A DNA stretch of 62,669 nucleotides, counting the filler, from Octopus bimaculoides (Eukaryota), in the NCBI RefSeq assembly GCF_001194135.2. It is 7 parts of 6 records of this genome, joined end to end, with 100 filler letters (N's around TTAATTAATTAA, not from the genome) between each part and the next. Parts side by side here need not be neighbours in the genome. Positions count along the whole stretch, not along the records: positions 41,740 to 47,794 come from NW_026355773.1; 6 more parts are not named here. One strand, written 5' to 3'. A program made the position numbers and the translations under genes. The notes under the pieces were generated by a model. It was given only the letters and a program-made list of their open reading frames with translations. It was not told the origin of the DNA and made no database searches. This document shows positions 41,696 to 47,838 of the stretch, piece by piece (the first letter of the stretch is position 1; every line of letters begins with the position of its first letter).

Positions 41696-41804
41696 NNNNN
41701 NNNNNNNNNNNNNNNNNNNNNNNNNNNNNNNNNNNNNNNGAGGGTGTCATAGAATTGGTCTTTCAGACCATCTGGTAGCCCAGGTTGAGGTGCATAGGCT
41801 GAGG

Positions 41805-43515
41805 GTCATAAAGTCGGGGACCAAAAATTGCACACAGTCCATTAAGTCGGGGACGCAAAATGGAACACTGGCCATAAAATCGGTGACTAAATATTGAACG
41901 CTGGCCATAAAGTCGGGGAGCAAGAATTGAACGCTGGCCAAAAAGTCGGTGTCCAAACATTTGCACACTGGCCATAAAGTCGGGGCCAAAATTTGCACAC
42001 TGGCTATAAAGACGGGGACCAAACATTGCATACTGTCAATAAAGTCGGGAACCAAAAATTAAACACTGGCCATAAGGTGGGGGACCAATAACTAAACACT
42101 GGCCATAAAGTCGGGGACCAAATATTTGCACACTGGCCAAAAAGTCGGTGTCGAAACATTTGCACACGGGCTATAAAGTCAGGGACCAAAATTTGCACAC
42201 TGGCCATAATGTCGGGGACCAAAATTTGCACACTGGCCNNNNNNNNNNNNNNNNNNNNNNNNNNNNNNNNNNNNNNNNNNNNNNNNNNNNNNNNNNNNNN
42301 NNNNNNNNNNNNNNNNNNNNNNNNNNNNNNNNNNNNNNNNNNNNNNNNNNNNNNNNNNNNNNNNNNNNNNNNNNNNNNNNNNNNNNNNNNNNNNNNNNNN
42401 NNNNNNNNNNNNNNNNNNNNNNNNNNNNNNNNNNNNNNNNNNNNNNNNNNNNNNNNNNNNNNNNNNNNNNNNNNNNNNNNNNNNNNNNNNNNNNNNNNNN
42501 NNNNNNNNNNNNNNNNNNNNNNNNNNNNNNNNNNNNNNNNNNNNNNNNNNNNNNNNNNNNNNNNNNNNNNNNNCCAAAATTTGCACACTGGCCATAATGT
42601 CGGGGACCAAAATTTGCACACTGGCCATAAATTCGGGGACCAAAAGTTGAACACTGGCCATAAAATTGGGGACCAAATGTTGAACACTGGCCATAAAGTC
42701 GGGGACCAAAAATTGCACACTGGCTATTAAGTCGGGGACTGAAAATTGAACACTGGCCATAAAGACGGGGACCAAACATATGCACACTGGCCATAAAGTC
42801 GGGGACCAAAATATGTACACTGGCCATTAAGTCGAGCACCAAAAATTGAAAACTGCCAATAAAGTCGGGGACCAAAAATTAAACACTGGCCATAAAATGG
42901 GGGAACAATAACTGAAAACTGGCCATAAAGTCGGGGTCGAAACATTTGCACAATGGCCATAAAGTCGGGGACCAAAATGTAAACACCGGCATTAAAGTCG
43001 GGGACCAAAAATTGAACACTGCCAATAAAGTCGGGGACTAAAAATTGAACGCTGGCCATAAAGTCGGGGTCGAAACATTTGCACACTGGCCATAAAGTCG
43101 GGTTCCAAATATTTGTGCACTGGCCAAAAAGTCGGGGACAAATATTGAACGCTGGCCATAAAGTCGGGGACCAAATGTTGAACACTGGTCATAAACTCGG
43201 AGTCGAATCATTCGCACACTGGCCATAAAGTCGGGGTCCAAATACTTGCACACTGGCCAAAAAGTCGGTGTCCAAACATTTGCACACGGGCCATAAAAAT
43301 CTGGTACCAAAGATTGGACACTGGCCATAAAGTCGGTGACCAAACATATGCACACTGGCCATAAAACCGGGGACAAAACTTTGCACACTGGCCTTAAAGT
43401 CGAGGACCAAAAATTGAAAACTGCCAATAAAGTCGGGGACCAAATGTTGAACACTGGCTATAAAGTCGGGGACGAAAAATTGCACACTGGCCATTAAGTC
43501 GGGGACCAAAAAGTC
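41805..43515 (+). repeat. 33-bp minisatellite, left arm (CACACTGGCCATAAAGTCGGGGACCAAAAATTG)n
   Basis: GGCC at 42590, 42623, 42656, 42689 gives a 33-bp period; 11-aa periodic ORFs. Confidence 0.97.
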
Positions 43516-43518
43516 AGC

Positions 43519-44648
43519 GACTTTTATGGCCAGTGTGCGAGTTTTTGTACCCGTCATTATGGCCAGTCTTCAATTTTTGGTCCCCGACTTCATGGTCAGT
43601 GTTCAATTTTTGGTCTCCGTCTTTATGGCCAGTGTGCAATTATTCGTCCCCGACTTTATGGCCAGTGTGCGATTTTTTGGTCCCCGACTACATGGCAAGT
43701 GTACGATTTTTGGTCCCCGACTTTATGGCCAGTTTTAAAATTTTGGTCCCCAAATTCATAGCCAGTGTTCAATTTTTGGTCCCTCGTCCTTATGGCCAGT
43801 GTGCAATTATTGGTCCCCGACTTTGTGGACAGTGATTGATTTTTGGTCCCCGACTTTATGGCCAGTGTTCAACTTTTGGTACCCGACTTTATGGCCAGTG
43901 TGCGAATTTTGTTCCCCGACTTTATGGCCAGTGTACAATGTTCGGTCCCCGTCTTTATGGACGGTGTGCAATTTTTGTTCCCCGACTTTATGGCCAGTAT
44001 GCGAATTTTGGTCCCCGATTTTATGGCTAGTGTTCAATTTTTGGTCCCCGACTTTATGGTCAGTGTTCAAAATTTTGGTCCCCGACTTTATGGCCAGTGT
44101 GCAATTATTCGTCCCCGACTTTATCGCCAGTGTTGAATTTCTGGTCCCCGACTTTATGGCCAGTGTACAATGTTCGGTCCCCGTCCTTATAGACGGTGTG
44201 CAATTTTTGGTCCCCGACTTTATGGCCAGTGTGCGATTTTTGGTTCCCGTCTTTATGGCCAGTGTGCAATATTTGGTCCCCGACTTTATGACCAGTGTGC
44301 GATTTTTGGTCCCCGTCTTTATGGCCAGTGTGCAATATCTGGTCCCCGACTTTATGGCCAGTGTGCGATTTTTGGTCCCCCATTTTATGACCAGTGTTCA
44401 ATTATAGGTCCCCGACTTTATGGCCAGTGTACAATGTTCGGTCTCCGTCTTTATGGCCGGTGTGCAATTTTTGGTCCCCGACTTTATGGCCAGTGTGCAA
44501 TTTTTGGTCCCCGTTTTTATGGCCAGTGTGCAATTATTCGTCCCCGACTTTATGCCCAGTGTTCAGTTTTTGGTCCCCGTCTTTATGGCCAGTGTTCAAT
44601 TATTCGTCCCCGACTTTGTGGCCAATGTCCGATTTTTTTGTCCCCGAC
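43519..44648 (-). repeat. 33-bp minisatellite, right arm (inverted), running into a ~950-N gap
   Basis: Units read ATGGCCAGTGTGCAATTTTTGGTCCCCGACTTT, the reverse complement of the left arm. Confidence 0.97.
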
Positions 44649-45599
44649 NNNNNNNNNNNNNNNNNNNNNNNNNNNNNNNNNNNNNNNNNNNNNNNNNNNN
44701 NNNNNNNNNNNNNNNNNNNNNNNNNNNNNNNNNNNNNNNNNNNNNNNNNNNNNNNNNNNNNNNNNNNNNNNNNNNNNNNNNNNNNNNNNNNNNNNNNNNN
44801 NNNNNNNNNNNNNNNNNNNNNNNNNNNNNNNNNNNNNNNNNNNNNNNNNNNNNNNNNNNNNNNNNNNNNNNNNNNNNNNNNNNNNNNNNNNNNNNNNNNN
44901 NNNNNNNNNNNNNNNNNNNNNNNNNNNNNNNNNNNNNNNNNNNNNNNNNNNNNNNNNNNNNNNNNNNNNNNNNNNNNNNNNNNNNNNNNNNNNNNNNNNN
45001 NNNNNNNNNNNNNNNNNNNNNNNNNNNNNNNNNNNNNNNNNNNNNNNNNNNNNNNNNNNNNNNNNNNNNNNNNNNNNNNNNNNNNNNNNNNNNNNNNNNN
45101 NNNNNNNNNNNNNNNNNNNNNNNNNNNNNNNNNNNNNNNNNNNNNNNNNNNNNNNNNNNNNNNNNNNNNNNNNNNNNNNNNNNNNNNNNNNNNNNNNNNN
45201 NNNNNNNNNNNNNNNNNNNNNNNNNNNNNNNNNNNNNNNNNNNNNNNNNNNNNNNNNNNNNNNNNNNNNNNNNNNNNNNNNNNNNNNNNNNNNNNNNNNN
45301 NNNNNNNNNNNNNNNNNNNNNNNNNNNNNNNNNNNNNNNNNNNNNNNNNNNNNNNNNNNNNNNNNNNNNNNNNNNNNNNNNNNNNNNNNNNNNNNNNNNN
45401 NNNNNNNNNNNNNNNNNNNNNNNNNNNNNNNNNNNNNNNNNNNNNNNNNNNNNNNNNNNNNNNNNNNNNNNNNNNNNNNNNNNNNNNNNNNNNNNNNNNN
45501 NNNNNNNNNNNNNNNNNNNNNNNNNNNNNNNNNNNNNNNNNNNNNNNNNNNNNNNNNNNNNNNNNNNNNNNNNNNNNNNNNNNNNNNNNNNNNNNNNNA

Positions 45600-45742
45600 A
45601 TCTATTTACAATTGAGTGGACTGCAGCAATATGAAATGAGGTGTTTTGTTCAAGAATACAATGTACTGCTCAGTATGGGAATTGAACCCACAATCTAGTC
45701 ACTGTGAGTGCAACACCCTAACCACTAGGTCACACGCCTTCA
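45600..45742 (-). mobile_element. tRNA-derived SINE head fragment
   Basis: GGGAATTGAACCCAC...AACACCCTAACCACTAGGTCACAC is the reverse complement of A- and B-boxes. Confidence 0.6.
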
Positions 45743-46089
45743 CACACACACACACACACACACACATGTATACATATGCATATATATAGAAGTATATATG
45801 TATGCATATGCATGTATGGCAATCATTTTTATGTCTGTTTTCCATGCTAGCATGGGTTAGATGTATATATATTTGATGATTTTTATTTACTTCTGGATCC
45901 CATTCATAACCCTTACCTATTGCTCAAGTAAGGGATCTCTTATTCTAATGGTTTATTCATTAACAGGGAAAACGATAACAATCTAATCGCTCATAGCTAA
46001 GAAATTGTCCGAGACAGCAAATGTAAACACACGAAGTATTGAGTAGAAGCTGTAATTAAGGCGAAAGTGAGAGAATGTTTTGGTTCTGT

Positions 46090-46165
46090 CTGAAGTCCGG
46101 ACGGACGGAAGCGCAGATGGGAGCATGCGCAATGGTGAGCGGAAGTGATCAGACGGCAGTTGGTT
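46090..46165 (+). promoter_or_regulatory. Candidate CpG-rich promoter
   Basis: Clustered CGGAAGCG (46106-46113), GCATGCGCA (46123-46131, NRF-1-like) and GCGGAAGTG (46139-46147, ETS), just upstream of a strong splice donor. Confidence 0.6.
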
Positions 46166-46229
46166 ATGATGGAATTAAGACGTGTTTGCAACGAAGAGAA
46201 GAAAACCTTCCCCTCCAGATTGTTGACAG
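46166..46229 (+). CDS. Candidate first coding exon (MMELRRVCNEEKKTFPSRLLT-G), phase 1
   Basis: ATG at 46166; donor ACAG|GTAAGA at 46229/46230; phase matches the Ig exon at 52034. Confidence 0.45.
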
Positions 46230-46869
46230 GTAAGAAGAAAAGCTCATTTCTCCTTGTTTTTGTAATGTCAACCCTCCTGTTTCTTAATTTTCCCTTTATA
46301 CCACAACACACACACGCTTTTGTGAGAAGCAGAGTAATGTTTATAATCGGTATATAACTTATACTGAAAAAACAAAAAAACAGAAAGAGACACTCAACCC
46401 TTTAATTTCTTCTGACTCTCCTCCCATTTCGTTTAATCTCACTTGACGCAGAAATACCCGAAGTCATCCAGTTATATTGTTTTGTTTGCAACGTCCTGTA
46501 CCCAGATATGCATATATATATATATATACAGGTAGATGAGGGTATGTACATGTATATATGCATATATATATGCATATACTTGCCTATTCCCCTTCTATAG
46601 TTGATTAATTTTTTCCTTCCCAGTATTTACAGCTAAGGCTACCTCGCATCACCAACTGCTTAGCCATAGATCTGACCGTCTCCTTATGAGCATGTGTTTT
46701 GTCATTTATTATTATTTCTCAGCAAACACCCTATACTTCGGTTTTACACTGATTAACGCTAACATAAGGATACTAATATATAACAGGGTAATGATATTTC
46801 TTTTATCATGTTTATGCTCTTCGCTTTAAATCAGTGTGGTATTAATCGTATTATTTTTTTATAGCCTTA

Positions 46870-47570
46870 AACAAAACACGTGTGTGTTTTTGGGTACATA
46901 CATGCATACGTGTGTTTGTGAGTGCATGCGAGAGTGGGCGTGTGTGAATGGGTACTTGTGTGTGTGTATGTGTTAGTATGTTTATGGGTGTATACTTATG
47001 CATACATACAAGTGTGTGCAAATATATACAAATGTGTGTACGTGTGGGTATGTGCATGCGTGCATATGTAGTAAGTGCGTGTGTGAGTATTGGCACGTCT
47101 GTATATATACAGGAATGTATGTATATAGACAGGCAAGCAAGTTAAGGCGCGCGTGTGTGAGCACATGTATTGGCGAAAGTCTCGATATGTGGTGTGTGTG
47201 TGGGGGGTGCTTGTGTTTGTGTGTATGTACGGGCATGTGTGTAGGAGCGTAGGTGTATGTTTGTATATGTGCATATATATATGTATATACATGTATAAAT
47301 GTAGGCGCATATGGCGGTGTACATGCATATATACATGCATGCATGTGTGTGTGCGTGTATACGTATGTATGAGTGTGCAGGTGTGGATACTTGCATGTTT
47401 GTACATATACAGGAAAGTAGGTATGGATACAGGCACGTATGTATAGGCGAGCGCGTGTGTGTGTACATATGTGCATGTGGAGGTTTCTGTGTGGGGGTGT
47501 GTATGTGGGCATGTGGATATGTACACATGGGTATGCGCATATGTATGTATGTGTGTGTGTGCGTACACGC
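46870..47570. repeat. Degenerate (GT/AT)n low-complexity tract
   Basis: Visible; explains the HT/YI/CV-rich ORFs. Confidence 0.9.
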
Positions 47571-47838
47571 ACGTTTTTGTAAATAGGTGTCTGCACGCTA
47601 GCAGACGCATATGTAAACACTCACTTTAATTACCTCCCCTCACCCACCCGAATGACTCCTTGACCACAACCTTTAGCATCACATCAGAGACACCCTCCCT
47701 TTATATTTCTATGTAAACTGGCTTTCTTATGCCTCTAAAGCCCATGGAATAATATCGGTGACCCCGTCGTAACTCTATGTAAACAAACCTTCTGNNNNNN
47801 NNNNNNNNNNNNNNNNNNNNNNNNNNNNNNNNNNNNNN

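What the first reader, a model, noticed from the sequence alone, without database searches (positions are those of the whole stretch)
41740..45598. Giant foldback palindrome made of a 33-bp tandem unit
About 1.7 kb of units in one orientation flips within contiguous sequence at AAAAGTC-AGC-GACTTTT (43509-43525) into at least 1.1 kb of inverted units. The arms carry different diagnostic variants rather than mirror copies, which argues against a simple read-foldback artefact. The left arm shows higher-order repeats (e.g. 42038 and 42860). A short unique leader (41740-41805) precedes the array. The architecture resembles Drosophila Foldback-type elements whose long TIRs are tandem ~31-bp units, or else an inversion made by template switching at microhomology.
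Basis: partly seen in the sequence, partly recalled or inferred. Interest (0 to 1): 0.8.

Follow-up and report, generated by a model that had tools for sequence, protein, structure and literature searches.

The report
Satellite array that switches orientation
A short block of a 33-base tandem repeat in an unidentified animal genome reverses direction once; the two halves are diverged arrays of one repeat family, not mirror copies, which is a known and fairly ordinary layout whose origin cannot be settled from this piece.

Summary
About 75 units of one 33-bp repeat (consensus CATAAAGTCGGGGACCAAAAATTGCACACTGGC) run on the + strand over 41807-43512. They then run inverted over 43513-44648.

It is not a palindrome in the strict sense. 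Mirror-position units are no more alike than random unit pairs (0.817 against 0.812 ± 0.006, p = 0.18). Unit order is not mirrored either (p = 0.41). Each arm has its own variants, and the right arm has its own 66-bp dimer pattern.

The junction is a left unit cut after column 21 abutting a reversed unit cut after column 15, with no foreign bases. The 7+3+7 mini-palindrome arises by chance in about 13% of simulated joins.

The edges of gap 1 share an exact 53-mer, so that gap is either spurious or a collapsed run of identical units. Gap 2 hides the right end, and its far edge is a SINE-like element.

I found no transposase, no second terminus, no testable target-site duplication and no other copy in any searchable collection.

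Best reading (confidence about 0.5): an old inversion-type rearrangement inside a short dispersed satellite array. A Foldback-like transposon and an assembly artefact remain live rivals. Interest is low to moderate.

The parts
41740..41806 (.). Unique 67-nt left flank ('leader'); the piece begins here, so nothing further left is available
   Evidence: There is no meaningful alignment to the unit in either orientation (best local scores 5-6). It has no counterpart in the right flank. The array starts abruptly at 41807 with a unit matching the consensus at 31 of 33 positions.
41807..42238 (+). Left arm, outer part: 13 units of the 33-bp repeat
   Evidence: Tandem Repeats Finder, period 33, 13.0 copies. 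Unit table.
42239..42573 (.). Assembly gap 1 (335 N), inside the left arm
   Evidence: The flanking 53 nt are identical (42186-42238 = 42574-42626), the longest exact repeat in the piece. The gap is either a spurious or negative gap, or a collapsed run of identical units (CATAATGTCGGGGACCAAAATTTGCACACTGGC).
42574..43512 (+). Left arm, inner part: about 28 units, ending in a unit truncated after column 21 (43492-43512)
   Evidence: The column 14 A>T variant (8/40 left, 0/33 right) and the 34-nt units (12/40 left, 3/33 right) mark the left arm.
43492..43528 (.). Inversion segment. Left unit columns 1-21 (CATTAAGTCGGGGACCAAAAA) abut a reversed unit truncated after column 15 (GTCAGCGACTTTTATG). 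It contains the 7+3+7 mini-palindrome at 43509-43525. In unit register the hairpin tip is GAC-CAAAAA-GTC (43504-43515)
   Evidence: Unit alignment. DNA fold of 43459-43575: -34 kcal/mol, z = -9.5, with the in-register tip. There are no extraneous bases. A chance stem of 7 nt or more has P = 0.13.
43513..44648 (-). Right arm: about 34 inverted units. The outer 15 units form a 66-bp dimer pattern (column 8 alternates T/A)
   Evidence: Best 99-nt direct matches are 0.95-0.96 at lags of 66, 232 and 264 nt, all inside this arm.
44649..45598 (.). Assembly gap 2 (950 N). It hides the right end of the array and its flank
   Evidence: The left edge is satellite and the right edge is non-satellite SINE-like sequence.

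Best explanation
This is a short, dispersed, non-coding satellite (minisatellite-scale) array of a 33-bp unit in an animal genome. The seen sequence totals about 2.5 kb, at most about 4 kb with the gaps. The array contains one real head-to-head orientation switch.

The switch most likely came from one old rearrangement inside or between arrays of this family. It could have been a two-break inversion joined end to end, or a fold-back or template-switch inverted duplication. The join put a unit cut after column 21 directly against a reversed unit cut after column 15. This step is inferred.

Since then each arm has turned over on its own through unequal exchange, conversion and local amplification. 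That erased any mirror symmetry and gave each arm private variants, including a private 66-bp dimer in the right arm. The pattern is shown; the process is inferred.

The structure has no demonstrated function. Its only direct physical consequence is that either strand, or a transcript across it, can fold into a long imperfect hairpin.
For: - The same consensus is found in both arms. Unit-to-unit identity is 0.81 within the left arm, 0.83 within the right arm and 0.81 between arms.
- There is no mirror symmetry. Mirror pairs score 0.817 against a null of 0.812 ± 0.006 (p = 0.18). Unit-order alignment gives p = 0.41.
- The arms are differentiated (p = 0.03), whereas the halves of one arm are not.
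- The best direct matches inside an arm (0.95-0.96) exceed the best inverted matches between arms (0.90).
- The junction has no foreign bases and lies mid-contig, 939 nt and 1131 nt from the contig ends.
- No coding signal was found. Five of the six consensus frames are open purely because 33 = 11 codons. There are no homologues among 5.8 billion proteins and no Pfam domain.
- The same anatomy is described for satellite arrays of Tribolium freemani: an abruptly terminated monomer followed by a reversed monomer truncated at another position, with no intervening sequence (bioRxiv 10.1101/2024.12.02.626372).
Against: - This is a single locus. No reads are available and no other copy of the family can be retrieved, so neither the reality of the junction nor its uniqueness has been checked.
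- The sharp left boundary with a near-consensus first unit, the roughly equal arms, and the euchromatin-like setting (a SINE, a microsatellite and a CpG-rich putative first exon within 1.5 kb) fit a discrete inserted element as well as an in-situ array.
- The mechanism of the join is not resolved. The microhomology is not significant (P = 0.13), and neither is the 6-nt phase offset (13/33 by chance).
Confidence: 0.5

Rival explanations
1. It is a non-autonomous Foldback-like DNA transposon, of the kind of Drosophila FB, Tetris or Rehavkus. Its long terminal inverted repeats would be built of the 33-bp unit, with essentially no middle domain, inserted near a gene.
For: - Two inverted tandem-repeat arms of similar size: left 1.3-1.7 kb, right 1.13 to at most about 2 kb.
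- An abrupt left boundary with a near-consensus first unit.
- A dispersed, euchromatin-like context.
- Foldback elements are defined by long inverted repeats with internal tandem repeats. Complete copies often lack ORFs and have 8-10 bp target-site duplications (PMC4079207).
Against: - No second terminus is seen. The reverse complement of the leader is absent from the right flank.
- A target-site duplication cannot be tested because the right end lies in gap 2.
- There is no transposase or any Pfam domain.
- No other copy was found in any collection.
- Units are only about 81% alike, which is low for repeated transposase-binding sites of a recently active element.
Confidence: 0.2
2. It is an assembly or library artefact. 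The junction would come from chimeric reads or a wrong path through a tangled short-read repeat graph, joining two differently oriented arrays that are not adjacent in the genome.
For: - The piece is a gapped short-read-style scaffold. Its contig ends break at a repeated 53-mer.
- Satellites are the regions most prone to misassembly.
- Non-mirror arms are exactly what a chimera of two loci would give.
- No reads are available to check.
Against: - The junction sits in the middle of a 2,075-nt N-free contig.
- No exact repeat of 42 nt or more occurs inside that contig, so the path is made of locally unique k-mers at the apparent k.
- The classic artefacts (missed-adapter reads, hairpin graph paths, fold-back end-repair products) give mirror-identical arms, which are absent here.
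- The join is clean, with truncated units on both sides.
Confidence: 0.2
3. It is a recent fold-back inverted duplication or true long palindrome. A double-strand break would have been followed by intrastrand priming at the unit's GTC-N3-GAC mini-dyad, and the arms would still be copies of each other.
For: - A very short spacer (3 nt, or 6 nt in unit register) and 7 nt of inverted identity at the centre.
- The flip coincides with the unit's only internal dyad, GTCGGGGAC.
- Fold-back junctions typically carry 2-8 bp of inverted microhomology (PMC3907307; PMC10622511, listed by title and abstract).
Against: - The arms are not mirror copies at any offset from -4 to +4 units, nor in unit order.
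- The innermost unit pairs are 0.79-0.85 identical, which is the background level.
- The microhomology is not significant (P = 0.13).
- An old fold-back event that has since been scrambled is not excluded. It is included in the best explanation.
Confidence: 0.03

Closest known systems
Inverted sub-arrays ('macro-dyad symmetry') in satellite arrays, e.g. TfSat01 of Tribolium freemani (bioRxiv 10.1101/2024.12.02.626372 = PMC12581902). Rarer orientation switches in mouse and human centromeric satellites are cited there.
   Same: The array consists of two inversely oriented sub-arrays of unequal length. The inversion segment is an abruptly ended monomer followed by a reversed monomer truncated at a different position, with no foreign sequence. 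The hairpin stem runs almost to the tip, with a short loop.
   Different: TfSat01 has a 166-bp unit, makes up about a third of the genome, is (peri)centromeric, and reuses six conserved inversion-segment types on many chromosomes. Here the unit is 33 bp and the array is 4 kb or less. The setting looks euchromatic, and recurrence of the junction could not be tested.
Foldback-type DNA transposons: Drosophila FB, Tetris of D. virilis (PMC4079207), Galileo, Rehavkus (PMC6446971)
   Same: Long inverted arms built of short tandem repeats, a possible absence of coding capacity, and a modest total size.
   Different: Those elements have defined terminal domains in inverted orientation, 8-10 bp (or 9 bp) target-site duplications, multiple dispersed copies and usually a middle domain. 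None of these could be shown here. One of them, the inverted copy of the left terminus in the visible right flank, was looked for and not found.
Fold-back inverted duplications formed at double-strand breaks (human germline: PMC3907307; yeast: PMC10622511)
   Same: A head-to-head junction with a short spacer and a few bases of inverted identity.
   Different: Those events give mirror-image arms, and in the human cases spacers of 766 bp to 70 kb. Here the arms are not mirror images and the spacer is 3-6 nt.

Membership tests
Foldback-type DNA transposon | Long inverted arms containing tandem repeats | tested here: met
   Units are on + over 41807-43512 and on - over 43513-44648.
Foldback-type DNA transposon | The same terminal sequence in inverted orientation at both ends | tested here: inconclusive
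   The left boundary is sharp at 41806/41807. The right end lies in gap 2. The reverse complement of the leader is absent from 45599-47794 (score 11 against a null of 12.2 ± 1.7).
Foldback-type DNA transposon | Target-site duplication of 8-10 bp | not testable with these tools
   The right end is hidden by 950 N.
Foldback-type DNA transposon | Several dispersed copies sharing termini | not testable with these tools
   No eukaryotic genome collection is on hand. The 24-mer found nothing in metagenome, prokaryote-genome or viral contigs. The 18-mer found only single chance hits in the metagenome and prokaryote-genome contigs.
Foldback-type DNA transposon | A transposase in the element (autonomous copies only) | tested here: not met
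   No Pfam family was found in any ORF of the piece. The array ORF has no homologues. Non-autonomous copies lack a transposase anyway.
Satellite array with inverted sub-arrays (macro-dyad type) | One monomer family in two inversely oriented sub-arrays | tested here: met
   The consensus is identical in both arms.
Satellite array with inverted sub-arrays (macro-dyad type) | Inversion segment made of two differently truncated, oppositely oriented monomers with no foreign sequence | tested here: met
   The left unit is cut after column 21 and the right unit after column 15, and they abut directly.
Satellite array with inverted sub-arrays (macro-dyad type) | The same inversion segment conserved at many loci, in a high-copy (peri)centromeric setting | not testable with these tools
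   Only one locus is available. The flank (SINE-like element, microsatellite, CpG-rich patch) argues against deep heterochromatin.
Fold-back inverted duplication / true palindrome | The arms are mirror copies of each other | tested here: not met
   Mirror pairs score 0.817 against a null of 0.812 ± 0.006 (p = 0.18). Unit-order alignment gives p = 0.41.
Fold-back inverted duplication / true palindrome | Inverted microhomology at the spacer boundary beyond chance | tested here: inconclusive
   There is a 7-nt stem with a 3-nt loop. A stem of 7 nt or more appears in 13% of 20,000 simulated joins of the same arms.
Read or graph fold-back artefact | Mirror-identical arms around the junction | tested here: not met
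Read or graph fold-back artefact | Lack of read support across the junction | not testable with these tools
   No reads are available.

The most novel reading that the evidence does not exclude
The structure is a discrete functional or mobile unit rather than a scar. It could be a Foldback-like non-autonomous transposon family whose arms are a 33-bp satellite, in an animal lineage where none has been described. Or it could be a hairpin-RNA locus: a transcript across 43370-43660 folds into one long imperfect hairpin (-180.8 kcal/mol, z = -18.9), and such a locus next to a gene promoter could feed small-RNA pathways.
Probability: 0.15. Interest if true: 0.5.

Novelty: new member of a known kind. 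Interest (0 to 1): 0.25.

Why it matters
If the junction is real, it adds one more example of a satellite array with inverted sub-arrays. That layout has been proposed to matter for satellite spread and chromatin structure in beetles, and it connects satellites with Foldback-type transposons. On its own, one unreplicated locus in a gapped scaffold of an unidentified species opens no new question. Its practical value is as a marker. The 37-nt inversion segment and the 67-nt leader are specific probes. With them, anyone holding the genome or its reads could quickly tell whether this is a local scar, a propagated unit or a mobile element.

Tried and rejected
1. **Related sequences.**
   - The 24-mer ACACTGGCCATAAAGTCGGGGACC occurs 10 times here. 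It has 0 hits in metagenome, prokaryote-genome and viral contigs.
   - The 18-mer CTGGCCATAAAGTCGGGG occurs 19-20 times here. It gave only 14 and 10 single-hit contigs, all prokaryotic or metagenomic, which I take to be chance matches.
2. **Protein route.** The 202-aa array ORF has no homologue. Exact look-ups of two ORFs are not on record. There are no Pfam domains. A coding reading is rejected. The ORFs exist only because 5 of the 6 consensus frames lack stops.
3. **Literature by sequence string.** The unit 12-mers hit only five papers on unrelated subjects, judged from their titles and abstracts. The SINE strings hit nothing. The organism stays unidentified.
4. **RNA families.** Only sub-threshold low-complexity 'mir-297/466'-type hits and a weak tRNA-like hit turned up. 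ARAGORN found no tRNA.
5. **Mirror symmetry.** Rejected at unit offsets -4 to +4, and also with unit insertions or deletions allowed.
6. **Strong higher-order repeat in the left arm.** Lag profiles are nearly flat, 0.78-0.835. Only scattered 3-unit blocks stand out.
7. **Centromere or telomere cues.** There is no CENP-B-box-like motif and no TTAGGG or TTAGG runs.
8. **Leader as degenerate units, or as an inverted terminus on the right.** Both rejected.
9. **Search not run.** I ran no further search on the 35-52 aa putative exon merely to name the organism.
Full report
**What is there**

The piece 41740-47794 consists of three contigs joined by two N runs, 42239-42573 (335 N) and 44649-45598 (950 N).

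Tandem Repeats Finder finds a 33-bp period at three places:
- 41807-42238 (13.0 copies)
- 42574-43512 (28.2 copies)
- 43518-44648 (34.1 copies), with a reverse-complement consensus

I cut the arrays into units against the consensus CATAAAGTCGGGGACCAAAAATTGCACACTGGC. This gave 40 complete units on the + strand and 33 complete units on the - strand, plus truncated units at the contig edges and at the junction. The 33-mer with up to 3 mismatches matches 28 times against 0 in shuffles. There are nine '+' matches left of 43512 and nineteen '-' matches right of it.

**The gaps (tested first, as asked)**

*Gap 1.* It lies inside the left arm. The 53 nt before it (42186-42238) are identical to the 53 nt after it (42574-42626). 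This is the longest exact repeat anywhere in the piece; the next longest is 41 nt. So it is not chance. There are two possibilities:
- The two contigs overlap, and the gap is a scaffolding artefact of length -53.
- A run of identical units (CATAATGTCGGGGACCAAAATTTGCACACTGGC) collapsed in a short-read graph.

By sequence the two sides are in the same unit register. By coordinates they are not, but the N-count is only an estimate. The left arm is therefore 1.3 kb if the contigs overlap, about 1.7 kb if the estimate holds, or longer.

*Gap 2.* It has satellite on its left edge. On its right edge is a tRNA-derived SINE-like element on the minus strand, whose tail runs into the gap (Rfam tRNA 21.9 bits at 45675-45732, below the threshold of 29). 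The right arm ends somewhere inside gap 2. Its terminus, its flank and any target-site duplication are invisible. All ORFs listed across either gap are meaningless.

**It is not a mirror palindrome**

Both arms have the identical consensus. Mean unit-to-unit identity is 0.807 within the left arm, 0.829 within the right arm and 0.812 between arms.

I tested for mirror symmetry in two ways:
- Units at mirror positions (innermost with innermost, and so on) are 0.817 identical. Random pairings give 0.812 ± 0.006 (p = 0.18). Offsets of -4 to +4 units give 0.805-0.817.
- A local alignment of unit order that allows unit gains and losses scores 0.324 in mirror order. Permuted order gives 0.317 ± 0.045 (p = 0.41).

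The arms are two diverged arrays of one family facing each other, not copies of one another.

They are mildly but really differentiated:
- Column 8 T>A: 10/33 right, 2/40 left.
- Column 23 T>C: 9/33 right, 0/40 left.
- Column 14 A>T: 8/40 left, 0/33 right.
- 34-nt units: 12 of 40 left, 3 of 33 right.
- A permutation test of within-arm minus between-arm identity gives p = 0.03. Splitting either arm in half gives p = 0.82 and p = 0.18.

The outer 15 units of the right arm alternate T/A at column 8, which is a 66-bp dimer pattern. The best 99-nt direct matches (0.95-0.96, at lags of 66, 232 and 264 nt) all lie inside the right arm. The best inverted match between arms is 0.90.

Higher-order periodicity in the left arm is weak.

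**The junction**

The left arm ends with a unit truncated after column 21: CATTAAGTCGGGGACCAAAAA (43492-43512). The right arm begins immediately with a reversed unit truncated after column 15: GTCAGCGACTTTTATG (43513-43528). Read on the other strand this is CATAAAAGTCGCTGAC, with two mismatches and one extra A relative to the consensus. There are no foreign bases.

The thermodynamically preferred fold pairs the arms in unit register, with the tip GAC-CAAAAA-GTC. For 43459-43575 as DNA it gives -34 kcal/mol and z = -9.5.

The mini-palindrome exists because the unit carries its own small dyad, GTC-GGG-GAC, and here that dyad abuts an A-run. I simulated 20,000 random head-to-head joins of the same two arms. 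A perfect stem of 7 nt or more with a loop of 6 nt or less near the join occurs in 13% of them. The 6-nt phase offset between the truncation points is also unremarkable (13/33 by chance, my arithmetic). The junction therefore does not discriminate between blunt end-joining, fold-back priming and template switching.

**Coding and other signals**

Five of the six frames of the consensus lack stops simply because 33 = 11 codons, so long ORFs appear mechanically. A 202-aa array ORF has no homologue in the 5.8-billion-protein collection. No ORF in the piece has a Pfam domain, so there is no transposase. There are no CENP-B-box-like motifs and no telomeric repeats.

A transcript across the junction would form one long imperfect hairpin. 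For 43370-43660 as RNA the fold is -180.8 kcal/mol with z = -18.9. That is an automatic consequence of the architecture, not evidence of function.

**Relatives elsewhere**

None could be found.
- The most frequent 24-mer has no match in metagenome, prokaryotic-genome or viral contigs.
- The most frequent 18-mer gave only single-hit contigs in the metagenome and prokaryotic-genome collections, which I take to be chance matches.
- Exact-protein look-ups failed.
- Literature string searches found five papers on unrelated subjects, or nothing.

The flank (a tRNA-derived SINE-like element, CA and TG/TA microsatellites, and a GT-AG-style putative exon) indicates an animal genome. This is my inference.

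**Interpretation**

*Shown:* one satellite family, two orientations, a clean truncated-unit junction inside a contig, independent variant profiles and no mirror symmetry.

*Inferred (confidence about 0.5):* a single old inversion-type event within or between arrays, followed by independent turnover of each arm.

The closest described anatomy is the inverted sub-array organisation of Tribolium freemani satellites. [quoted passage not shown] The differences from that case are scale, copy number and the unknown recurrence of the junction.

*Foldback-transposon reading (about 0.2).* It remains open.
- The architecture fits the definition used for Tetris and FB: long inverted arms with internal tandem repeats, often no ORF, and 8-10 bp target-site duplications (PMC4079207).
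- The abrupt left boundary and the euchromatin-like context are suggestive.
- Every feature that would actually define membership is either hidden in gap 2 or untestable. These are the inverted termini, the target-site duplication and dispersed copies.
- The leader's reverse complement is not in the visible right flank.

*Assembly chimera (about 0.2).* It cannot be excluded without reads. However, the usual fold-back artefacts predict mirror-identical arms, which are absent. The junction also lies mid-contig in locally unique sequence.

*Recent fold-back palindrome.* This is refuted by the mirror tests. Fold-back junction features from the literature are short spacers and 2-8 bp of inverted microhomology (PMC3907307; PMC10622511, listed by title and abstract). 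They are compatible with what is seen here but not significant.

**Verdict**

The label 'giant foldback palindrome' is not: this is a satellite array with an orientation switch. It is a new member of a known kind, of low to moderate interest (0.25). The decisive tests need the source reads and genome.

Noticed in passing
window 45599-45766: A tRNA-derived SINE-like element lies on the minus strand. Its tRNA-like head is at 45675-45732 (Rfam tRNA 21.9 bits, below the threshold of 29; ARAGORN finds no tRNA). Its tail is cut by gap 2. A (CA)13 microsatellite follows directly at 45741-45766.
   Followed up: partly
window 46000-46260: A small CpG-rich patch (CpG observed/expected 1.02, GC 0.46) carries an ORF at 46075-46233 (+). 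The ORF ends at a GTAAG splice-donor-like site (46230-46234). This could be the promoter and first exon of a gene about 1.5 kb from the array. There is no Pfam match, and I did not search for homologues.
   Followed up: partly
window 46850-47600: A TG/TA-rich low-complexity tract of about 750 nt contains an internal duplication of about 300 nt (47075-47159 against 47375-47459, 75%). It produces sub-threshold Rfam hits of the 'mir-297/mir-466/mir-3149' type, which are composition artefacts.
   Followed up: partly
window 42186-42238 and 42574-42626: The two edges of gap 1 are an identical 53-mer, the longest exact repeat in the piece. This suggests the assembler broke at a k-mer-length repeat. 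The gap is either spurious or a collapsed run of identical units.
   Followed up: yes
window 41756-41770: The unique leader contains a perfect 6+3+6 hairpin, TGGTCT-TTC-AGACCA. The leader as a whole does not fold better than shuffles (z = -0.9).
   Followed up: partly
window 41807-44648: The unit's CpG (column 9-10, GTCGGGG) is well conserved: C in 37/40 and 31/33 units, G in 38/40 and 33/33. The right-arm variant T>C at column 23 creates a second CpG. CpG observed/expected is 0.69-0.70 in the left arm and 0.85 in the right arm.
   Followed up: no
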